Shown piece by piece: positions 8,801 to 64,000 of a DNA stretch of 64,000 nucleotides. The translations under genes were made by a program, and so were the position numbers. The DNA is from Camelus ferus (Eukaryota): the NCBI RefSeq assembly GCF_009834535.1, contig NC_045720.1, positions 1,426,001 to 1,490,000 of the forward strand, read 5' to 3'. Each line of letters begins with the position of its first letter. The first letter of the stretch is position 1. A model generated the notes under the pieces. That model ran no database searches, was not told the DNA's origin, and saw only the letters and a list, made by a program, of their open reading frames with translations.

Positions 8801-10376
8801 TTCTAGAATTGTGACCTTCTGGTTCCAGCCAGTCTGGGGTCGAGTGCTTATGGTCGGCATATAGTCGTCACCCTTCACTGGGTGGGGTTCTTAGTTTCTG
8901 CAGAACAACTTGAAGGTATGTGTCAGACTGTTACCTGTGTCCCTTCAGGAGGAACCAGGAGCCATGTGACTCTTGTCCTAATTGTCCTGCTTGAGTCTGC
9001 CCTTTGGAACTCAGGGAAGCCAGCGAAGAAGCAGGGGCATGGAGAGGCTTGTGCCTGGCAGGGCCTGGCAGGGCCCCGCGGGGTCCTGCTGGTTCCACCA
9101 GAATCGCCCCTGTTACACTCTACCCACAGCAACACAACTCCTTATGTAGATTACTGAGCAGAGCAGCAACTAATGACCGTATCGCTGCCGGGTGAGAGGT
9201 AGAGACATGGCCCTGTCCGGTGTCCCGCCTGGCACTGCCCCAGGGGGTATGTCCCCAGAGGTGGCCTCCCAGGGGGAGACTGCTGCCCACCCTAGAGAGT
9301 TAGCCTTTGCTCGAGGCCCCGCAGTTGGTTGCAATGGCCTCTGGTCAAGGAACAGCCTTGATCCACTGGGAGCTGGTGGCTCTGTCTCTCTGCTTGGCCA
9401 AGGCCTCAGAGGGCCATGTCCTTCTTGGCCCTGGTGGCTCTGATGCCCCGCTCCCTAAACACTGCTCCTAACTATGCTGTCTAAAAGCGGACGTTTATGC
9501 AGCCCGCTCTCAGCGCTACTCATGACTGAACCCACTTAGCCCCCAAGCAATTGCAGAAGTTGGTTCTCTTTTTATCCACATTCTCCAGACGAGGAAGTTG
9601 AAGCACCTGAGGATGACCCTCCAGCCCTCTCTGACTTCTGGGCCAGCTGCAAATAGGAGTCCCTTTGTCAGGGTCACAGTTTCAAGCACGTTCTGAGTAG
9701 GAAGGGTGAAGGGGAGCAAGGCATGCTGAGCCAGCACTCCTGGGCTCTGAGCCGCCTGCACTGTTGTCTCAGGAGCCTGGCTCAGCCGCCCCAGTGTCCA
9801 CAGAGGAGGCCGTCCTGCCCAAGAGCCCTGCTCACCCTGAGGGGCTGCTGTCAGCCCCGCCTCCCTCTCCAGCCCCTTCCCTTCCCTTCCGGATGTGAAG
9901 CTCAAAAGGCAACTGAGGCCGCCCTGGGCCTTTTAATCCTCTAGCCACCACTTCCTCAGGCTTTTCAGTCCCAGAAAGGGACCGGGGCGAGCAGGGCCTG
10001 GCATTTCCTCTGGGCCCTGAAACCCAGAGCGGAGAAGAGCTCCCACACATCTGCCAGAGAGAAGGGGAAGAGGGGCTGGGCGTGGGGCCTCACCATCCCA
10101 AGGGCTGGCTGGCTGGGTGGCCACAGAGCACGCCGCCCATGGGCACTCGCCCCTCTCTCTACAGCCAATCCCGGCGGCATCCTGGTCATGAAGTCCTGTG
10201 CCCCGACGTGCCCCAACAGCACTGTGTCCTCCGATGGCCGGGCGCTGTCCGTCTACTGCTGTCAGGGCAGCCAGTGCAACCGTAGCGCGGCCATGGGCCT
10301 GACGGGCAGCCACGGGGCCCTGTGGATCAGCGCCTTGGCCAGCCTGTTGTGGGTGCTGCTCCAGGCTGCCTGGTGA
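5855..10376 (+). pseudogene. Ly6/uPAR family GPI-type gene with disabled exon 2 (Ly6g6g/D730001G18Rik-like by synteny)
   Basis: Exon1 5855-5906 MRPLLVFLLLAALCTVL+G|GTAAG. Exon2 7327-7401 (V)RALRGHVCCGQCSPTDRFCVITRA+A is followed by CTGAGT instead of GTGAGT; LRCHVC has become LRGHVC and the exon is only 75 nt. Exon3 10165-10376 (T)NPGGILVMKSCAPTCPNSTVSSDGRALSVYCCQGSQCNRSAAMGLTGSHGALWISALASLLWVLLQAAW* is intact. AATAAA at 11167. Confidence 0.8.
8561..9097 (-). mobile_element. Solo LTR (ERV1-like) in intron 2 of the upstream Ly6 gene
   Basis: Contains aagccaatctactgacaccggcttgtggtgaagg...catttattt...ctcaaaagctccgaactccccaatggctttcaggga and ends ggccccgcggggtcctgctggttcca, as in laurasiatherian ERV1 LTRs read in reverse. 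Confidence 0.75.
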
Positions 10377-43887: not shown

Positions 43888-45874
43888 ATGCGGGGGACAT
43901 GGCTGGCGCTGCTGGCGCTGGTGCTGGCTGCTGGAGGCGGTGAGCTCGCTGAGGGGTGCAGGCACCTGGTAGGGGACAGGGGGAGAAGGAGCGCAGGGAG
44001 GATGGGGGGAGGCGAGCGAGAAGGGAGAGAGGCGGTGGGGTGGGCCAGGGACAAGGGGCCCCAGTGCATTCAGGTCACCCACAGCCCAGGTGTGAGTGTG
44101 GAGGAGCACGGCAGGAAGGGCTGAGACTGGCCAGGTGGTTGGTGGCCAGGACCCTGGGTGCCGGCTGGGGAGCCGCCCTTCATCGAGGGCGTGGGCACCA
44201 GGAAGGGCCTTCTGCTGGGAAGGGCAGGCAGGGTCAGGATCCTGCTCCCTGGGTCCAGGGCTGAGGTGCTGAGGCCGGTCTCAGGAGGTGCCTCGGGACA
44301 CCAGGGAGGTGCCGAGGGCAGGGGGAGCAGGAGATGGGGAAGAAGGAAGCAAACCCAGACACATCGGGGGACTTAGGGTCTGAGAGAACACCTGGGGGAG
44401 GTGTCCCAGGCCCCTGGGGACCCACGCCCTATCAGAAAAGGGGCTGGGTGGAGCAGGCCCCAGCCAGACGGTTCTGCCCATTTCCTAGAGGGGGAAACTG
44501 AGGTCATCCCGAGAGACAGGCAGCACTCAGCGGGGGCCGAGTGGCCGCGGCCTCGCTGTGCGCCAGGGGCTGCTCGGGCTGCCATGATGGGGCTGGGGCA
44601 CCAGAGCTGGAGGAAAGAGGACCAGCCTGCTCCCCCTGCCCCTGCCAGCCTGCGCCCTGACCCGCCTGGGTCCCACCGGGTGTGGCTCTTCTCCCTCCCT
44701 TGTTACGCTGGCACCATGTACCTCCCTTGCCTGATCCCTGATCCTCACGGCAGCCCTTTGAGTCCTCCACTTTGCTGACGCGGACCCCGAGGGGCTGGCC
44801 CGCCTCCCCACCCCTGCCAGGCCCCTCACCGCAGGGGCACCAGTGCCTCGGTCTCCCTGTGCACCCCCAGCACTTCCGAAGCTGCATCATCTCTCCCTTG
44901 GCCGTGGCGGGCACACTCTGCCTCAGGGCGGGGGCCCCAGCTCACACGCAGCTCTTGAATCTTCCTGGAGTTCTGGCCGGTGGGCGACTGGACCCTGAGT
45001 GGCGTTGTCCCCCTCAACCTGGGTCTCTGGGTCAGAGGGCTTGGGAGGGGCAGGGCCTGCCTGATCCACCCCTCATCTCTCCTTCCCCAGTGGGGGCCCT
45101 GCAGTGCTACACCTGCCACGAGCCCAGCAGCCTGTCCAGTTGTGTCACTGCCGTCACCTGCAACGCCAACGAAACCATGTGCAAGACCACACTCTACTCC
45201 CTGGAGATGGGTCAGTGGGGCTGGGGGGGGGGGTGCAGGGCTGGGGTCCCAGGGGCAGGGCTGCCTCGACCCAGTCGCTGCTGGCCAGCCCTGGCCCCCA
45301 GTGGGCAGCGAGCAGCCATCACCCTAGTCATTTCCAAAAAGGGCTTTGGGTCCAAGCAACCGGGACTCTCCCCCTCCCCGTTCTCTCCCTTCCCTCCCGT
45401 AACAGGGAAATCTTCAGTCTTGCTTGGGAGTCACTGGGAGGGAGGTGCCCCGTCCAGCAAGGCGTCCTGTGCAAGTCGCTGGGCACCCAGCGCACAGTAG
45501 GCGCTCAGCCTGCAGTGGTGGGAGGAGAGGGGGCTGGGTCACGGAGAGGCTGAGACCGGTGTGGCGGCCCCAGAGTGGGCGCTGTGCGAGGTGGCCGGGC
45601 TGGGGCTTCGGAGGCCATGGAGGACGTGGCCACAGGCCAGCCTGACACTGGTACCCCTGTGCCCCCAGTGTACCCCTTCCTGGGGGACTCCACAGTGACC
45701 AAGTCCTGTGCCAGCAAGTGCGTGCCCTCGGACGTGGACGGCATCGGCTTGACCCGGCCCGTGTCCTGCTGCAACACTGACCTGTGCAACATGGATGGGG
45801 CGCCTGTGCTGGGCAGCCCCTACGGCCTGGCCTTCACCCTCCTGCTCATCCCCCTCTGGAGCCTCGGCTTCTAG
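43888..45874 (+). CDS. LYPD2: LY6/PLAUR domain containing 2 (125 aa, GPI-type)
   Basis: Exons 43888-43939, 45091-45210, 45669-45874. [125 protein letters not shown]. Confidence 0.96.
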
Positions 45875-49160: not shown

Positions 49161-49218
49161 TGACTCACATGCCACTCCCACCACCACCCAGAGTAGGAGC
49201 CTGAGCGCGGGGTATAAA
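49161..49218 (+). promoter_or_regulatory. SLURP1 promoter: AP-1, CACCC/KLF-like motifs, TATA
   Basis: TGACTCA 49161-49167; ccaccaccc; TATAAA 49213-49218. Confidence 0.7.
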
Positions 49219-49267: not shown

Positions 49268-50367
49268 ATGGCCTCTCCCAGGGCCCTGCCACCGCTGCTG
49301 CTGCTCGCTGCGCTCTTGGGTGCACACTCTGGTGAGTGCGGCAGGGGTGGCTGTGGAGGGGTCCTCGCCTGGCCCACCTCCTCAGTGGTGAGGGGGCGTC
49401 CGAGGGCTTTGAGTGGAAGCCCTCCTTAGGCCCACTGGGCTCACCTCCCTCACCCTAAAAGAGCCTCCTGGTCCTGAGCCTGGCTTCACCGGGGTGAAGG
49501 GGGCAGGGGTCACAGCCCGTTCTCCAGGCAGGAAAACTGAGGCTCGGGTAGAGAGATGCAGTGTTCAGGTCTGCCGCCCCCAGCCCCAGGCTTGAAGGGT
49601 CTCAGCGAGGCGAGCCCTGTCTCCCGGGGAGGGACAGGGGACGCCCTCCAAGCAGACCTGTGGGGATGCCCCAGGGGAGGGCCACCCCCATCTCTTCTCC
49701 AGCCTCCTTCCTGCCTCCAGGACGGATCTCAAAGTCAGGTGATGAGGGTCTGCCCCTACCCTTCACCCAGGTGAGGCCTTCAGGTGCTTCACGTGCAAGC
49801 AGCCCACGCCCATTTCTTTGTGCAAGAACATCACTCGCTGCAAGCCGGAGCACACGGCCTGCAAGACCACACTGGTGGCGGTGGAGTCAGGTGAGGCTGG
49901 GGGGTGTTGGGGGCGGGGGTCCAGCAGGCTGGCTCTGAAGGGCTGCCCAAGGGCTGCATCGGCCTCGGCTCTGGGCTTCCATCCCAGGGCCACACCGCGG
50001 ACCCCAGCAGGGCACTGGTGGGGCACGGAGGACTCCCCAGGCCTGCTGTTAGTTCAGCGGTCTCAAGGTGGCGGGGGAGGCGGTGGGAAGGTCAAGGTGA
50101 GGTGCATGGAGGCGGGGATGGCGCTGGGCAGTTGGGGGCTGGCTCTGACCCCTGCCCGCCCTGGCAGAGTTCCCCTTCGGCCAGAGCCCTGTGGTGACCC
50201 GCTCCTGCTCCAGCTCCTGCACGGCCACTGACCCGGACAGCTTTGGGGTCAGACACCCCGTCTTCTGCTGCTTCCGTGATCTCTGCAATTCTGTGGGGGC
50301 CGCCAGGCTCAGTGCCGGGGCCCTGGCCACTCTGGGGGCCACACTCCTCAGCCACCTCCTTCCCTGA
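49268..50367 (+). CDS. SLURP1: SLURP1 ortholog, 127 aa, with a C-terminal hydrophobic (GPI-signal-like) extension
   Basis: Exons 49268-49331, 49771-49890, 50168-50367. MASPRALPPLLLLAALLGAHSGEAFRCFTCKQPTPISLCKNITRCKPEHTACKTTLVAVESEFPFGQSPVVTRSCSSSCTATDPDSFGVRHPVFCCFRDLCNSVGAARLSAGALATLGATLLSHLLP; syntenic between LYPD2 and THEM6. Confidence 0.96.
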
Positions 50368-52462
50368 AGAGCCTGGCTCTGCCAGTGGCCACCACTGCTG
50401 GCACGCCTCCATGGCCCAAGCTCCCTGGGCCTCAGGTTACCCGTGGGACCCTAGGGGAGCTTCCCAGGTGGGCCTGGGTCTTCCCAAGTGCGTGGGAGGG
50501 GGTGTGGAGTGCTGCACCCACCAATCTCCATGGGCCTTAGTCTCCTCCTCTGACAATGGGCCTGTTACACCCTCGGCCCTGGGGACAGCTGAGATTCCAC
50601 GAGATTGTGTGCACGGAATACTAAGGCCGCCCAGCTTCCCCAAGGCCCCCCGGGCTGCTGAGAGGTTCCCAGGGGCCAGCCTGCCAGCCGGAGGAGCAGC
50701 AAGTGTCCTCGGGGGCTGAGCACCCCCCAGGGCCCAGGGCCCTTGGGCCCCAGGAGAGCCCGCCTCAAGCTCCTGCTTCCCCCTCACATGGCTCCCAGCT
50801 GTCCCCGGGTGTGACCTGCTCCAGCCCCACTGTAGGCAGGCGGAGGCAGGAGCCTGAGTGACCCCAGGGGCGTCGATGCCCCTCTCCAGGCACAAGTTCC
50901 CATTGGGCCTTCTGGGCCGGGCACTTTCCAGATTCTATGTATGGCCAAACTTCCAGACAGCCCCACTGGACCCTGCATTTGGAGGCAAGAAGCCAGAGCT
51001 ACGGCCTCCCCTCGGGGTCTGAGCAAGCCCAAGTCACTCCACCTCAGCTTCACCAGCAGAGCCACAGGGAGGGTGCCTTCGGGTCTCCGAGGCGGGAAGG
51101 GCAGATGGGAGAGGCTTGGCAGCTGCCCATCCCCCAGGAAGGCTGGTGGGCGGCCAGGGGCACCTGCAAGGCCTCCGCTCTGCTCAAGCGTGGCCAGCAG
51201 AGGGCGTGCGCCCCTCAGGCTCCTCCCAGGGGCAGCCAGGTCAGGGTCTCATACCCCAGACACCCAGAGATCGGCCACCAGGTCCTCTCCATCCCATCCT
51301 CTGCCCTGGCTCTCCCTGCCACCTGCCCAGGACTGAGACACGCCCCCATGGTATGTCCTCCAAACATAGACTGAGAGCCTCCTGTCCTCCTGTCCCCCTG
51401 CCCCCTCGGCTGGGGTGCATCTCCCTGAAGTGGACAGAGAAGTCCCCATGCCCCGGGGCACAGCCACACTCAGCCCAGACGCCCTTGAACATCTTGAACC
51501 ACACCCCCCTGGTCGCCCCCCACACACATGGTGCCAAGCAGGGCAGACTACGCCCAGGCACCCCAAGCAGGGCTCCCCAGCCCCTGCCCTGCTCCAGGGT
51601 CCCAGCCAGCCACTCAGAACCACTGGCTGGACCTGCCTGGGCCTAGACCACCTGGGGGCACCATTTCCTGTCTGCAGTCCCATTTGTAACTTGTCCCGGC
51701 TGACAATGGTCAACTCAGACAACTGCCATGACCCCCTCAACCCCCCTGCCTCGTGGCCCACAGCACCTGTGCCAACGTCTCTTAAGTGAAGAGAAACAGA
51801 CATTTGACGCGGCTGCCACTGGCTCAGGGCAGGCGTGAGGCACAGCCTGAGAGGCCCCAAGGCCCTCAGACCTGGCGGGAGACGGAAAGGGCAGCAGACC
51901 ACTGACCTGCCATGTGCTTCTCCACTCCCACTGCCCCATCCCTGAGTGCCTGCTGCAAACACAGCTGCTTCCAACTGCTCTTTCTCAAGTCCGCCTGGGC
52001 CCTCCTGGGCAGAAGGTCAGGGCACAGACACCCCCCTCACTCACCTGCCCTATGTCCTCTCAGGGGGCCCTGCAGAATATCCCTGTGCTCCGCCCCCACC
52101 CATCCCCCCACCCATGAAGGCCCACTGACCTGTGTCCCCACGTGCCTCCCCCGACTCTGCCCAGTGATCCCCCAGGGGCCTGGGGGCCCAGACCCAGAAT
52201 CTGGGGCACAACCTCGCAAGCCCCTGTGGAGGGCTGTGGATGAGGAGGGCCAGGGGCTGGAAGAGGCTTTGGGCAGCTCCTTTCTGGCCTTGGTCCCATG
52301 TTCCATGGACCAGGGACGAGTCCTGCCCGGGCAGCCTGGCCCCAAAGTTCACGTAACAATTTGGGCAACACCCCCCTCCACAGCTGTAAGTGGCCCGCCG
52401 CTTCCCTGGCGGGGGTGGGCCTCAGAAATGGGGCCTCTCCGGCACACTCACATTTAACACCC

Positions 52463-53853: not shown

Positions 53854-56541
53854 TCACTCGTCCTTGACGACATCGCTGAGCCCACTCTCGGCCCGGAGCA
53901 GCTGGCTGCTGGCCTCATTGTAGGCAATCCAGTGCTGCAGGTCTTCCGGCAGCTCAGGGGGCTCCACCTGCAGGGGAGAGCAGGGTGAGACTCCCACAGG
54001 CCACCCGCTGCCCTGTGGATGAGCCGCATTGTGGGGAGGGGGACCCAGCCCGGTTGCTGCCCTCACACCTCTGCGCCTCTGCTCATGCTGTTCCCTCTGC
54101 CTGAATGCTGCTCCCCAGCCCCAAGGGGATGTCATCCTCCTCCCCTTCCAGGTATCCCCTCCCTGACACCCTCCCAGGCCCCTCGGTGCTTCCTCTCCCC
54201 CATCCTAGCTCTCGAGACACCACCCTGCCTTTGTTGGGCCTGTCTTCCCCAAGCCCAAGCCCTCTGCATGTCCCCAGAACCAGGGCAAAACCCTCTGAGG
54301 CCAGCAGCGGGTGGAAGGAGACCCAGAGTGACCAGAGGCCTGTGGGAACAGAATCCAGAGTAGAGTGACTGCTGGGAGAGCCCTGGGCAGGGGCTTGTCT
54401 GAGCCCCTCTCGTTTTCAGTGCACCAACGGGAGCTGGACTCCACCTCCCGGGTCAGCTCTGAGCCTGACCACCACCACTGCCAGCCCTCCTACTCAGCGA
54501 CACCTGCCACCTCCCTGCCAACCCGGCCATTTTGTGATGGGGCCAGGTGACAGGCTGGGCCAGGTGGAGGGGTCTGAGGCCCTGCAGTGGGGCTTTGGGG
54601 GCTCTCAGGGAGGAAGGAGCGTCAGGGGGGCTGGGCAGAGGTGCACAGAGCCAGGTTACTGGGCGAGTCTGGGCAGAGCTGGGCCTGGCTCTTGGACGCA
54701 TCCTCCTCCCAGCCCAGCTGTAACGACCAGAGCCAGACTTGGCTGCAGCCAAGCTCTCCCCACAAGGCCACACTGTCCATGTGGATCCCTGGGCACTGGA
54801 CTCAGCCTGCCCCACACTAAATCCCAGGTTGCATCTGGGACCCTCCCGCCCCAAGGGCTCAGGCTGGGTGACTCCTGGCCATGCCCTGGCCCTCCTATCT
54901 GTGGCTGGGTATCGTCGGGGCATCCCTGCCATGCTGTGGTATGAACCCCCTCACCTCTCATGTGGACCTCACCCATCAGCCCACACCTGACCATGTGGCA
55001 CCCTCCCCTGAGGGAAAGTGGTCTTGACTCCCTCTCCTCCATCTTTCGGTCACAGCACTCAGCTCATCAATTTAAGGCATCAGTGGCCACCTGCTGGCCT
55101 CCGGACACATGCAGGGACACACAGAGCATCTCTGGGGGTGTGGGGTGGGGAGAGACCCAGGCCCTGTGGGGGTGTTCCTGACTTAACAGAGACAGAAAAC
55201 CAGGGGGCTAAGCCTGTGGCCTGCTGTGCAGCCTCGGGCAGCTCCCATCGCCTCTCTGAGTCTCAGTTTCCCCACCTCTGATATAAAGGAAAGGCTGGCC
55301 TCTTAGATTAAGGTGAGGCTGTGTTCCTCTGCTCTGGTCCAGGGCCAGAGATGGCAGTGCCCTGCCTGAGAGCACCTATGGGTCTGGGAGTCCCTAGCTC
55401 TGGCACGGAGGCTCCAGGCACGTTTTTAGGAACCTGCTTGCAGCAGGAGTCTGCTCCAGCAGCCATCACCATGGCGGCATCCCCAGGGCCCGGCTGCCAT
55501 GCAGCAGTAGCAGGCCATGCTGTACCAGGAGGAGCAGGCCCTGGGGAAAGGCCCTGAGCCTCAGGCAGATGCTGTGGCCTTCTTCTCTCCACCTGCAAAA
55601 GGCAGAAGGGCCTGCAGCTCTCTGGGACTCAATCCCCACCCCACACCTAGGTGATGGTGACCCAGCCCCTTAGCTCTAAGCTAGGTGAAGGGAATCCCAG
55701 GTCCTTGAGAACTCCCAGAAACCTCCTGCACAGACAACCTCCCCCTCCTTCCTCCATCTTCCATTCAGAACCAAGGACCGGTGAGGCTGACTCCACACTC
55801 CGACTGAATCTGACTATGAAAAGTTGATCAGGGGACCTGGGAAGGTCCCAGTAAGAACAGCATCAGAGAAAAAGGCCCTGGGTCCAAAAGAAAGGGCTGG
55901 AGCAGTACTTAGCAGGGCAGAGGCACTTGAAGGAGGGGTAGGCACTGGGCCTTCCCAGGGCTGGGGGCAGGGATCAGGAGTCCTCCGGGTCGGGCGGAAG
56001 GAGTGAACTCGGGGCGGGGGATGCTCACCCTGCGCTTGCACAGGTGCTGCACGACGCGCTCCGGGGAGGTGCCCAGCACGTGCTGGCGAGAACGCACCAG
56101 CGCGCACACGAAGCCGTCTCGTAGACTGATGAAGCGCGCCTCCAGGTAGAAGGCGCGGTCGTCCCAGCCCAGCAAGCGGGTGCGCACCTCGAACGGCTCG
56201 AGCAGGCGCAGCGAGCGGCGGTAGCGCGCGCACGAAGCGGCCAGCACGGCGCGGGCCCCGAGAGAACGCAACGCCCCGAGCACGCCGCAGCGGGCCAGGT
56301 GCGCGGCGCGCGCCACGTCGGCCTCGCGCAGGTAGCGCGCGTTGTTCATGTGCAGCAGCAGGTCCAAGTCCGAGGGCAGCACGCGGCCCGCGAAGCTCTG
56401 CTCAGCCAGCAGGTCGCGGACGCGCGGCTGCAGCAGGCGCGCGCGCAGCACGGCGCACGGCACGCGCACCAGGTACCAGCCATCCAGCAGCGCGAAGTAG
56501 GCGAGCGCCAAAGCCAGCACCGCCACGAGCAGCCCCAGCAT
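53854..56541 (-). CDS. THEM6: Thioesterase superfamily member 6 (208 aa)
   Basis: Exons 56541-56029 (171 codons, [29 protein letters not shown]...[18 protein letters not shown]...HLCKRR|GTGAG) and 53967-53854 ([37 protein letters not shown]). Confidence 0.98.
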
Positions 56542-57000
56542 CGCGGCGGCGGCGGCGGCGGCAGCGGCGGCGGCAGCGGGCGCGGCGCGCGGCGAAGCCC
56601 TCAGCACGGGTGCCAGCTGTGCGCGCGGCGCCGGAGCCCGAGCGCTGCCACCCGCGCCCCGCGGGCCCGCCTGGGAACCCGCGAGAGCGGCGCGGCCGGA
56701 GCGAACCACCTCGCGAGGCCGGCTGAGGGGGAAAAGCGCCCGAGGTCGCTGGCGCCGCAGGCTGGAGCCCCGCCCCGCCCCCCCCCGACTCTCAGTGGTC
56801 CGTCCCATCCCCCGCCGCTAGCGCCGCTTTCGCTTTTCCCCGGGGCAGGCGGGGCACGGGGCGGCGCGCCGAGGGCCACAGCGGCCTCTGGCGGCCACGC
56901 CCCGCTCTGCAGGCGCAGGAGCTTCCCGGATCTCCCACAGCGTCGCGCCCTTGCTCGGAGCGCTAGCCGCCCTGCGCCTCTCCGTGGCTCCGGTAGAGCC
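55990..57000. promoter_or_regulatory. THEM6 CpG island/promoter with GC boxes and a candidate CTCF site
   Basis: CpG-dense; cgccccgccc at about 56770; TGGCCGCCAGAGGCCGCTG on - at 56879-56897. Confidence 0.75.
56542..56580 (-). repeat. Interrupted (GCC)n tract immediately 5' of the THEM6 ATG
   Basis: gct gcc gcc gcc gct gcc gcc gcc gcc gcc gcc gcg ATG. Confidence 0.85.
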
Positions 57001-63158: not shown

Positions 63159-64000
63159 CTGCAGCTGTGGGGCCCCAGAGTGGCAGCCCACTCAGAGCAG
63201 GGAGCAGCGTCAGAGTGACGGCTGCTGGCCACGGGGCGTGGCCCCACTAGCATTGCACAGGTCGGCGGAGCAGCATGTGACATTTTTCTTGCCCACGCAG
63301 TAGGCCTCTGAGTCCTCCACGCAGTGCGCGCTGCAGCCCTTGCTAATGACGGTCACGAGGCCCACGATGCTTGTGGGGGAGGGCAGAGGACTGCTAGGCT
63401 AGGGCCGGGTCCTGGAGACTCACCCACCTGGCCTTGCTCCAGCTCCCAGGGCGTCCCAACTGTCCCTACTCTAAAACTCACCCTGGATGGACATTGAGAC
63501 TGCAAGCAGAGTGAGGGCAGGGATCTGGTCTTGTCCCTGTCCACGTGTCCAGGGCACCCAGACCTGCTGGTACTAGAAGTGGGTGACGAATGAGTGGATC
63601 AGGGGTGGGTGGATGGATGGCTGATAGATGGATGGATGCATATCCATTGAGGGGATGGGTAGATGAGGGGTGGGATGGGGGATGGGCAGATGGGGGCTGA
63701 GCGCTATATCCGCGTGCGGACAGAAGAACCAGTGGGCAGGGGGACAGGCGGGCAGAAGGATGAACAGTTCAGTGGCAGAGACCTAATGCCAGATTCTTTG
63801 AGTTCCTATCAATGGAGGGAAGGCGTAGGGGGTCTAAGGGGATGGTGCTGGGGGCGGGGCAGGGTCACAGGGAGAACTGCGGGGACAGCGGGGCCACTCA
63901 CGGGTGCGCTCAGTCTGGCACTGGGTCTTGGATTGGCTGCAGTTCTGCACCTGCTGACAGTCCTTGTTGCTGATCTGGGCCTGACAGGAGCAGCACTGCA
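63159..64000 (-). pseudogene. PSCA: Prostate stem cell antigen, exons 2 (partial) and 3, with inactivating lesions
   Basis: Exon2 >64000-63902: LQCCSCQAQISNKDCQQVQNCSQSKTQCQTERT+C|GTGAGT. Exon3 from 63370: (R)IVGLVTVISKGCSAHCVEDSEAYCVGKKNVTCCSADLCNASGA. The acceptor reads cacAA; a 1-nt deletion at about 63240 gives TPRGQQPSL* (stop 63210-63212). Confidence 0.85.
63590..63700. repeat. Degenerate (GGAT)n tract in PSCA intron 2
   Basis: gggtggatggatggctgatagatggatggatg. Confidence 0.75.

What the first reader, a model, noticed from the sequence alone, without database searches (positions are those of the whole stretch)
50168..50367. SLURP1 here looks GPI-anchored, not secreted
Seen: after CCFRDLCN the frame continues SVGAARLSAGALATLGATLLSHLLP*: small residues (candidate omega site S/G/A), a short spacer and a hydrophobic end, like the GPI tails of LY6D, LYNX1 and LYPD2. 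Established: human SLURP1 ends ...LCNSEL* and is a secreted alpha7-nAChR modulator mutated in Mal de Meleda. Inference: the ancestral SLURP1 was membrane-tethered and secretion arose by truncation in some lineages, which changes its signalling range from paracrine to cell-autonomous. Other ungulates may share the tail.
Basis: partly seen in the sequence, partly recalled or inferred. Interest (0 to 1): 0.7.

Follow-up and report, generated by a model that had tools for sequence, protein, structure and literature searches.

The report
Camel SLURP1 keeps ancestral GPI-type tail
The camel version of SLURP1, a skin and cornea signalling protein known as "secreted" in people and mice, still carries a 25-residue tail that looks like a membrane-anchor (GPI) signal. 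That tail is the ancestral mammalian state, has been kept under selection in many orders and was cut off independently at least a dozen times, but whether it is really used as an anchor signal remains untested.

Summary
Exon 3 of a three-exon SLURP1 gene (50168-50367, +) reads on after CCFRDLCN for 25 codons to a TGA. The 127-aa product is identical to the NCBI Camelus model.

An open 25-codon run is not remarkable in itself. The evidence comes from comparison:
- The same tail, in the same frame and ending at the same stop, occurs in ruminants, hippo, moles, shrews, pangolin, elephant seal, squirrel, beaver, kangaroo rat, gundi and pika.
- Its dN/dS is 0.24-0.60, below 1 under every codon model tried.
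- A dugong remnant and a marsupial SLURP1 with a classical GPI-type tail put the tail at or before the placental ancestor.
- Primates, myomorph rodents, hare, degu, tree shrew, cetaceans, most carnivores and afrotheres lost it through different lesions, at least 14 events.

GPI competence is plausible but marginal. There are small omega candidates (S103, G105), a 24-residue signal and a predicted helix. Total hydropathy is slightly above CD59's, but the hydrophobic core is weaker than in LYNX1, LY6D or LYPD2. No GPI predictor or experiment was available.

The idea that SLURPs descend from GPI-anchored forms through a stop codon is already published. I found no paper noting intact tails in living mammals.

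The parts
49213..49218 (+). TATAAA motif about 50 nt upstream of the start codon; putative core promoter
   Evidence: Read directly from the sequence; not tested further.
49268..49331 (+). SLURP1 coding exon 1: start codon and most of the signal peptide (MASPRALPPLLLLAALLGAHS...)
   Evidence: GT donor at 49332-49333. The product is identical to P0021.
49771..49890 (+). SLURP1 coding exon 2: end of the signal peptide and the first half of the LU domain (Cys27 to Cys52; N41-I-T sequon)
   Evidence: AG acceptor, GT donor at 49891-49892. Pfam UPAR_LY6 and Toxin_TOLIP match residues 24-103.
50168..50289 (+). Exon 3, LU-domain part, up to the C101-N102 motif
   Evidence: Columns invariant across 19 orthologues.
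50290..50364 (+). 25-codon C-terminal tail, S103 to P127: the candidate GPI-attachment signal
   Evidence: Homologous 25-aa tails occur in at least 12 mammalian families. There are no indels among 9 species. dN/dS is 0.24-0.60 and below 1.
50290..50298 (+). Candidate omega region: S103-V-G and G105-A-A (small omega residue, small omega+2 residue)
   Evidence: Rule-based scan, using the pattern described in PMC10491789.
50320..50364 (+). Moderately hydrophobic end, ALATLGATLLSHLLP; predicted alpha-helix
   Evidence: Hydropathy measures. AlphaFold2 helix at residues 111-125 with block pLDDT 63-71, while the rest of the model is poor.
50365..50367 (+). TGA stop, at the position shared by all long-tail mammals; still alignable in lemur and dugong
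   Evidence: Nucleotide alignment.
50615..50626 (+). Site where other mammals have the AATAAA polyadenylation signal. Camel reads GGAATACTAAGG, a 5-nt loss relative to Budorcas
   Evidence: Alignment. No common polyadenylation hexamer on the + strand until 52484.

Best explanation
This is the last coding exon of the camelid orthologue of SLURP1. [quoted passage not shown] The most likely function of that pro-peptide is as a GPI-attachment signal of marginal hydrophobicity. On this reading, the signal peptide is removed after about A24 and the LU domain folds with five disulfides. GPI transamidase then cleaves at S103 (or G105) and transfers the domain onto a GPI anchor, removing the last 22-24 residues. 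Camel SLURP1 would then be displayed on the outer leaflet of epithelial cells, like LYNX1 or LYPD2, and become soluble only after shedding. Shown here: the gene model, orthology and synteny; the tail's wide conservation; purifying selection on it; its ancestral status; and its repeated independent loss. Inferred: cleavage and anchoring, cell-surface localisation, and any change in the range of cholinergic signalling.
For: Orthology:
- The product is identical to the NCBI Camelus SLURP1 model.
- The gene lies between the LYPD2 last exon (45767) and a THEM6-like 4HBT_2 ORF at 55909-56805 on the minus strand.
- It sits inside a placental SLURP1 clade (support 98/98). That clade joins the marsupial sequences at 100/98 and is separate from the LYPD2 clade at 99/97.

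Conservation:
- 25-aa tails with the same stop occur in camelids, ruminants, hippo, moles, shrews, pangolin, elephant seal, squirrel, beaver, kangaroo rat and pika. Gundi has 22 aa.
- There are no indels in the 75 nt among 9 species, whereas the 3'UTR just after it is full of gaps.
- Vicugna has an identical tail.

Selection:
- My ML codon model with shared branch lengths gives omega 0.285 for the tail and 0.123 for the LU part. The likelihood-ratio statistic against omega=1 is 49.
- IQ-TREE on the tail alone gives omega 0.24, 0.31 and 0.60 under F3X4, F1X4 and equal frequencies. The statistics are 30.7, 24.1 and 6.5, so p is at most 0.011.
- In neutral simulation the observed hydrophobicity and lack of charge are reached in at most 0.1% of runs. 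No Asp or Glu occurs in any of the nine tails: none of 2,000 neutral runs was free of them, and P=0.024 even under a uniform omega of 0.285.

Signal anatomy:
- There is an N-terminal signal peptide.
- Omega candidates are SVG and GAA, 24 and 22 residues from the C-terminus, with a short spacer containing Arg and an uncharged final 15 residues. This fits the pattern given in PMC10491789.
- The ProtScale window-9 Kyte-Doolittle sum is 21-22. The experimentally established GPI protein CD59 scores 17.7 (PMC9520029 Table 2; my recalculation gives 17.3-18.7).
- Truncated or internally deleted tails score 5-8.
- The tail is the only moderately confident part of the AF2 model and is helical.

Ancestry:
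- Marsupial Dromiciops SLURP1-like (P0076) ends in a classical hydrophobic GPI-type tail, with best 15-residue mean 2.59.
- The sauropsid sister sequences from lizards also have such tails.
- Dugong has a TAG at tail codon 4. It is followed by an in-frame remnant, with one 6-nt deletion, that runs to the ancestral TGA.
Against: - The hydrophobic core is weak. The best 15-residue Kyte-Doolittle mean is 1.49 in camel, against 2.02 for LYPD2, 2.49 for LYNX1 and 2.78 for LY6D in the same window. It contains Gly, Thr, Ser and a conserved His or Arg four residues from the end.
- The spacer (about 7 residues) and the hydrophobic stretch (15 residues) are at or below the low end of the 8-12 and 15-20 ranges quoted in PMC10491789.
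- The omega candidates follow the last disulfide-bonded Cys almost directly, without the polar linker seen in many GPI proteins.
- The tail has been lost at least 14 times independently, so it is dispensable in many lineages.
- dN/dS is two to three times higher than in the LU domain.
- With a uniform omega of 0.285 the retention of hydrophobicity is only borderline (P about 0.05).
- No dedicated GPI predictor, transcript data or protein chemistry was available.
- All source databases call the protein 'secreted', although that is a name transferred by homology.
Confidence: 0.55

Rival explanations
1. Decaying relic. The tail descends from a GPI signal but has become too weak to be processed efficiently. 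On this view the protein is mostly secreted with or without the tail, or part of it is degraded in the ER. The purifying selection seen would only keep the tail harmless.
For: The placental tail is much less hydrophobic than the marsupial one (best 15-residue mean 1.49 against 2.59) and than the neighbouring paralogues. There are at least 14 independent losses. Omega is higher than in the LU domain. Property-specific constraint is only borderline.
Against: Omega is significantly below 1 under every frequency model. Frame and stop have been kept for roughly 100 million years (from general knowledge of mammalian divergence times) in at least 12 families. Acidic residues are completely absent. 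Total hydropathy is not below that of CD59. From general knowledge, uncleaved GPI signals usually cause ER retention, so a useless tail should be selected against rather than conserved.
Confidence: 0.25
2. A different function for the tail. It could be an amphipathic helix with a Leu face and a small-residue face (A/G/S/T spaced at i and i+4). Such a helix might act as a pro-peptide, a peripheral membrane-binding or oligomerisation element, or a partner-binding segment that stays on the mature protein.
For: A helix is predicted at residues 111-125. Sequence-level conservation (the pattern GALAxLGAxLLxHLLP across orders) is rather high for a GPI signal, which normally needs only physicochemical properties.
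Against: No such function is known for any Ly6 protein. The layout (small residues, then a spacer, then a hydrophobic end exactly at the C-terminus) is the family's standard GPI layout, and the marsupial orthologue has a classical one. Repeated loss leaves the LU domain intact.
Confidence: 0.13
3. Alternative 3' processing. In vivo, a cryptic donor or another 3' exon removes the tail codons, so the dominant camel protein is short and secreted.
For: A GT at 50312-50313 (CTCA|GTGCC) lies at the point where the Moschus model P0049 leaves the tail. The camel lacks the conserved polyadenylation signal, so its 3' end is uncertain.
Against: The tail is contiguous with the LU-coding part of exon 3. 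The NCBI models of Camelus and Vicugna and about 20 other species use the uninterrupted exon. Protein-level selection on the tail means it is translated. The aberrant models give long unrelated extensions, not short forms.
Confidence: 0.05

Closest known systems
[quoted passage not shown]
   Same: Orthologue. It has the same three-exon structure, the same position between LYPD2 and THEM6, 10 cysteines and 65-72% identity. The LU domain is conserved up to CCFRDLCN.
   Different: The human type ends SEL after CN and the hamster type ends after 10 residues (SGDPGLVTGL). Both are too short for a GPI signal, and these proteins are found in body fluids (PMC4839075). Camel has 25 residues with a hydrophobic end.
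LYNX1 (GPI-anchored) and SLURP2 (secreted), neighbouring genes in the same cluster
   Same: They are a tethered and a soluble three-finger nAChR modulator. Window LYNX1 has a 24-residue tail after CN, about the same length as the SLURP1 tail. Window SLURP2 ends CNRD.
   Different: The LYNX1 tail is much more hydrophobic (best 15-residue mean 2.49; sum 36) than the SLURP1 tail (1.49; 21-22). In SLURP1 the two states are orthologues in different species, not two genes in one genome.
LYPD2, the adjacent paralogue
   Same: It is the nearest cluster by protein-language-model features (score 0.96). It has the same overall length and the same layout of signal peptide, LU domain and hydrophobic tail.
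   Different: It forms a separate clade (99/97). It has the PSDVDGIG motif where SLURP1 has ATDPDSIG, and a more hydrophobic tail.
Loss of the membrane-anchoring region in snake three-finger toxins and other Ly6 genes (PMC10421932)
   Same: It is the same kind of evolutionary event: a stop or frameshift ahead of the anchoring region turns a tethered Ly6 protein into a secreted one, and this recurs in the family.
   Different: That paper treats the SLURP1/LYPD2 subfamily as lacking the region. Here the region is intact in many placental SLURP1 genes and was lost many times within one orthologue group.
CD59 GPI-attachment signal
   Same: It is a Ly6-fold protein with a weakly hydrophobic GPI signal that is nevertheless used. 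Its hydropathy sum is 17.7 (PMC9520029), against 21-22 for camel SLURP1. The Pfam CD59 profile aligns weakly through the tail to residue 120 (26.5 bits, below the 33.9 cut-off).
   Different: From memory, not tested here: CD59 has a longer polar linker before its omega site, and its local hydrophobic core is somewhat stronger.

Membership tests
SLURP1 orthologue group | Single LU (Ly6/uPAR) domain with 10 cysteines behind a signal peptide | tested here: met
   Pfam UPAR_LY6 (E 7e-14) and Toxin_TOLIP (E 2e-14) match residues 24-103. Cysteines are at 27, 30, 39, 45, 52, 75, 79, 95, 96 and 101.
SLURP1 orthologue group | Conserved position in the Ly6 cluster: LYPD2 upstream on the same strand, THEM6 downstream in convergent orientation | tested here: met
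   LYPD2-type last exon at 45767. 4HBT_2 thioesterase ORF at 55909-56805 on the minus strand (E 4e-25). THEM6 next to SLURP1 is described as ancient synteny in PMC10421932.
SLURP1 orthologue group | Groups with named SLURP1 proteins rather than LYPD2 or other Ly6 genes in a tree | tested here: met
   Placental SLURP1 clade 98/98. With marsupials 100/98. LYPD2 clade separate at 99/97. The alignment has only 90 columns, so deeper forks are unresolved.
SLURP1 orthologue group | Secreted, with no membrane anchor (the property in the gene's name) | tested here: inconclusive
   The sequence carries a GPI-type tail. Neither secretion nor anchoring could be tested.
GPI-anchored proteins | N-terminal ER signal peptide | tested here: met
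   Hydrophobic N-terminus LPPLLLLAALLG, aligned with the signal peptides of the orthologues. No dedicated predictor was run.
GPI-anchored proteins | Omega site with a small residue, omega+1 not Pro, omega+2 small | tested here: met
   S103-V-G and G105-A-A, using the rule in PMC10491789. 7 of the 13 long-tail species scanned have an S/A-x-G triplet at the first tail position; elephant seal, squirrel and gundi do not.
GPI-anchored proteins | Hydrophilic spacer of about 8-12 residues, then 15-20 hydrophobic residues ending at the C-terminus | tested here: inconclusive
   The spacer is about 7 residues and contains Arg. The last 15 residues are uncharged but only moderately hydrophobic (best 15-residue mean 1.49). 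The hydropathy sum of 21-22 is above CD59's 17.7 but below LYPD2 (27), LYNX1 (36) and LY6D (41).
GPI-anchored proteins | Positive call by trained predictors (NetGPI, PredGPI, big-PI) | not testable with these tools
GPI-anchored proteins | Release by PI-PLC, detergent-phase partitioning, and dependence on GPI transamidase | not testable with these tools
   Needs experiments. No paper on SLURP1 protein from a long-tail species was found.

The most novel reading that the evidence does not exclude
[quoted passage not shown] It was converted to a freely secreted factor at least 14 times independently, in primates, myomorph rodents, hare, degu, tree shrew, whales, several carnivore families and afrotheres. 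That would make the human and mouse 'secreted' state a derived minority condition. It would also offer a natural replicated experiment on switching a three-finger modulator from tethered to diffusible.
Probability: 0.45. Interest if true: 0.7.

Novelty: new member of a known kind. Interest (0 to 1): 0.5.

Why it matters
SLURP1 biology rests on human and mouse data, where the protein is soluble. This covers Mal de Meleda, corneal immune privilege and alpha7-nAChR modulation. If the protein is membrane-anchored in many other mammals, three things follow:
- The family name and the automatic 'secreted' annotations would mislead for those species.
- Livestock and other non-rodent models may differ from humans in the range of this cholinergic signal.
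- The repeated, independent truncations give a comparative handle on why a tethered three-finger protein becomes diffusible. The same step is thought to have preceded snake three-finger toxins.

The question is cheap to test by transfection with PI-PLC release. Even if the tail is inactive, a conserved C-terminal extension under purifying selection needs an explanation.

Tried and rejected
- The first homologue search used exon 3 alone (65 aa). It was limited by the length filter to proteins of at most 113 aa and so under-sampled long forms. It was repeated with a 110-aa hit and then with an alignment.
- DNA for the squirrel orthologue was not retrievable because the file was too large.
- My first exon regex missed four loci and was replaced by a TDPD...CC anchor.
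- The first IQ-TREE parsing failed and was fixed.
- Nei-Gojobori counts gave higher ratios (pN/pS 0.68 for the tail, 0.46 for the LU part) than ML. I report both, and I treat the equal-frequency ML value (0.60, p=0.011) as the conservative bound.
- The AlphaFold2 model was poor (mean pLDDT 43), so no fold search was run. Only the helical tail is mentioned, as weak evidence.
- Table S2 of PMC9520029 (hydropathy of all human GPI signals) is not held. Galian 2012 and Adermann 1999 are not held either. The reference distribution is therefore limited to five published values plus the in-window paralogues.
- Assembly or annotation artefact was rejected, because the same frame and stop occur in many independent assemblies.
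- 'Chance open frame in the 3'UTR' was rejected on the selection tests.

Full report
**1. What is at the coordinates**

The interval 50168-50367 is the third and last coding exon of a three-exon gene on the + strand.
- Exon 1 (49268-49331) encodes the start codon and most of a signal peptide.
- Exon 2 (49771-49890) and the first part of exon 3 (50168-50289) encode a Ly6/uPAR three-finger domain with ten cysteines.
- All junctions are GT/AG.
- After the family's terminal CCFRDLCN the frame continues for 25 codons (50290-50364), SVGAARLSAGALATLGATLLSHLLP, to a TGA at 50365-50367.
[quoted passage not shown] It differs at one residue, outside the tail, from that of Vicugna. The window is therefore camelid DNA, and the gene model is the public one.

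**2. It is SLURP1**

- A scan for the LU-domain end motif finds last exons of LY6D (19807), LYNX1 (31235), SLURP2 (39352, ending CNRD), LYPD2 (45767) and this gene, in that order on the + strand.
- Downstream on the minus strand is an ORF with a 4HBT_2 thioesterase domain at 55909-56805 (E 4e-25). This fits THEM6, which PMC10421932 describes as an old neighbour of SLURP1.
- Pfam finds UPAR_LY6 and Toxin_TOLIP at residues 24-103.
- In a tree of 46 LU domains the camel protein lies in a placental SLURP1 clade (98/98). That clade joins two marsupial sequences (100/98) and is separate from the LYPD2 clade (99/97). The alignment has only 90 columns, so deeper forks are poorly resolved.

**3. The tail is not a chance read-through**

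Twenty-five open codons in GC-rich DNA would not be remarkable alone. The evidence is comparative.

Among 74 proteins recovered, a homologous tail of 25 residues ending at the same position occurs in these groups:
- camelids;
- ruminants (Budorcas, Capra, Cervus);
- hippopotamus;
- moles (Talpa, Galemys; a shorter form in Condylura);
- shrews;
- a pangolin;
- elephant seal;
- a ground squirrel;
- beaver;
- kangaroo rat;
- pika.

A gundi has 22 residues.

I fetched DNA for eight long-tail loci plus three truncated ones.
- The nine long-tail sequences, including camel, align over the 75 nt without a single indel and share the stop codon.
- The 3'UTR immediately after it is full of gaps.

**4. 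Selection on the tail**

| Method | Tail | LU part of exon 3 | Test against omega=1 (tail) |
|---|---|---|---|
| My codon-model ML, species tree, shared neutral branch lengths | omega 0.285 | omega 0.123 | LRT 49 |
| IQ-TREE, F3X4 | omega 0.24 | omega 0.10 | LRT 30.7 |
| IQ-TREE, F1X4 | omega 0.31 | omega 0.32 | LRT 24.1 |
| IQ-TREE, equal codon frequencies | omega 0.60 | omega 0.52 | LRT 6.5, p=0.011 |
| Nei-Gojobori pooled pN/pS | 0.68 | 0.46 | not tested |

- In the shared-branch model, equal omega for the tail and the LU part is also rejected (LRT 20.6).
- The tail is therefore translated and under purifying selection, weaker than in the folded domain in the shared-branch and counting analyses. 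The size of omega depends on the model.
- Choosing species because their tails are intact biases counts of stops and frameshifts. It should not bias dN/dS much.
- I simulated evolution from the consensus along the fitted tree. With omega=1, the observed hydrophobicity and low charge were reached in at most 0.1% of runs.
- With a uniform omega of 0.285 the retention of hydrophobicity was borderline (P about 0.05). The total absence of Asp and Glu in all nine tails had P=0.024.

**5. Ancestral state and losses**

- In dugong a TAG sits at tail codon 4. The sequence after it still reads in frame, with one 6-nt deletion, as ARPG..ALAMLGTTLLGRHPS up to the ancestral TGA. Elephant also stops at codon 4. 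The tail therefore predates the split of Afrotheria and Boreoeutheria.
- The marsupial Dromiciops protein named SLURP1-like (P0076) groups with placental SLURP1. It ends in a classical GPI-type signal...KPSALLRLTVLASFLCLISLLGMVP, with a best 15-residue hydropathy mean of 2.59.
- Lizard sequences in the sister group also have such tails.
- The Tasmanian devil model has a different, polar end, which I could not check at the DNA level.

Short or disrupted tails carry different lesions in different lineages:

| Lineage | State of the tail |
|---|---|
| Lemurs and loris | TGA after Ser103, plus a 28-nt deletion in the sifaka (Propithecus, the only one with DNA) |
| Catarrhines | SEL then stop |
| A titi monkey | SELGA then stop |
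| Tree shrew | Unrelated 21 residues |
| Myomorph rodents | 4-nt deletion and stop after 10 residues |
| Degu | Stop after 7 residues |
| Hare | Stop after 7 residues |
| Cetaceans | Stop after 17 residues |
| Feliforms | 21 residues, now polar |
| Bears | In-frame deletion, 15 residues left |
| Dogs | In-frame deletion, 12 residues left |
| Mustelids | Frameshift |
| A fur seal | SM then stop |
| Paenungulates | Stop at codon 4 |
| Tenrec | Stop at codon 7 |
| A sengi | Stop at codon 9 |

Because elephant seal, gundi and pika keep the long form, the losses in their relatives are separate events. I count at least 14 independent events. Some models could still be annotation errors.

**6. Is it a GPI signal?**

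The layout matches the pattern summarised in PMC10491789: a small omega residue, omega+1 not Pro, a small omega+2 residue, a spacer, then a hydrophobic stretch at the very C-terminus.
- Candidates are S103-V-G and G105-A-A, 24 and 22 residues from the end. A spacer containing Arg108 follows, and the last 15 residues are uncharged.
- The length equals that of the in-window LYNX1 tail (24 residues).
- I reproduced the measure used in PMC9520029, the sum of window-9 Kyte-Doolittle scores over the signal. For CD59 my value is 17.3-18.7 against the published 17.7.
- On that measure the camel tail scores 21-22 and the other long tails 15-31. Truncated or deleted forms score 5-8. LYPD2, LYNX1 and LY6D from the window score 27, 36 and 41.
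- By a local measure the camel tail is weak. Its best 15-residue mean is 1.49, against 2.0-2.8 for the paralogues.
- The spacer and the hydrophobic stretch are at the short end of the quoted ranges.
- AlphaFold2 with a 19-sequence alignment gave a poor model (mean pLDDT 43). Its only moderately confident part is a helix at residues 111-125. PMC10421932 uses such a helix as the mark of the membrane-anchoring region.
- The nearest cluster by language-model features is LYPD2 (0.96). This is a lead only.
- No GPI predictor, transcript evidence or protein chemistry was available.

I therefore rate 'functional GPI-attachment signal' at about 0.55. 'Real, ancestral, selected C-terminal extension' is close to certain.

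**7. What is known**

- Reviews treat SLURP1 as secreted and lacking the anchoring region throughout (PMC6600238, PMC4839075, PMC2686098, PMC10421932).
- PMC3339605 lists bovine Slurp1 as 126 aa without comment.
- PMC6502960, citing Adermann 1999 and Yan 1998, says that in SLURP genes a stop codon precedes genomic sequence that could encode a GPI-attachment consensus, so membrane-bound forms came first.
- In six literature searches, five of them on SLURP1, I found no statement that living mammals retain the open, conserved tail. I also found none that the truncation happened many times, and no experiment on SLURP1 from a long-tail species.
- The sequences themselves are public, under names that say 'secreted'.

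**8. Verdict**

The ancestral tail and its repeated truncation are supported. GPI anchoring is plausible but unproven, and the consequence for signalling is inferred.
- I class it as a new member of a known kind: a Ly6 protein with the family's usual GPI-type architecture, in an orthologue group thought to be secreted.
- Interest is moderate, because the test is simple and the result would change how SLURP1 is viewed outside primates and mice.

Noticed in passing
window 50615-50626 (and 52484): Camel SLURP1 lacks the AATAAA that most of the other mammals aligned have about 165 nt after the stop. Camel reads GGAATACTAAGG where Budorcas has GGAATACATAAATAG. No AATAAA, ATTAAA or common variant follows on the + strand until 52484, about 2.1 kb downstream. 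The 3' end of the camel transcript is therefore uncertain.
   Followed up: partly
proteins P0078, P0092, P0216 (Sus scrofa): Pig SLURP1-like models look degenerate. Several conserved cysteines are replaced (for example SSSG where others have SSSC, and CLTREQRP where others have CFTCEQP). The end motif is FCS instead of LCN. Two different C-termini are annotated, one still tail-like (PTGAARLSARALATLGPTLLGHLFL). This may be a pseudogene or a fast-evolving copy in pigs.
   Followed up: no
window 63252-63275 (minus strand): A Ly6-type last exon ends ...CCSADLCNASGATPRGQQPSL then stop, with no hydrophobic tail. It is PSCA-like by position beyond THEM6.
   Followed up: no
window 10257-10280 and downstream: Another Ly6 last exon has a clear GPI-type tail (...CNRSAAMGLTGSHGALWISALASLLWVLLQAAW).
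   Followed up: no
window 50308-50315: CTCA|GTGCC inside the tail coincides with the point where the Moschus model (P0049) leaves the tail for a long unrelated extension. It may be a cryptic donor or a gene-prediction artefact.
   Followed up: no
proteins P0058-P0066 (cetaceans): Most cetacean models share a tail cut at 17 residues (...GALAPRGP). Most also have CCS instead of CCF in the end motif, and their lengths vary. The gene may be decaying in whales, as several skin genes are.
   Followed up: no
window 55909-56805 (minus strand): ORF with a 4HBT_2 thioesterase-like domain (E 4e-25), consistent with THEM6 convergent with SLURP1.
   Followed up: partly
loci L003 (JGI metagenome 3300043088) and L007, L009 (Logan runs): Mammalian SLURP1 exon 3 sequences (beaver-like, shrew-like, muroid-like) turn up as short contigs in metagenome or other sequencing runs and were called as prokaryote-style ORFs. 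They are host DNA in those data sets.
   Followed up: no
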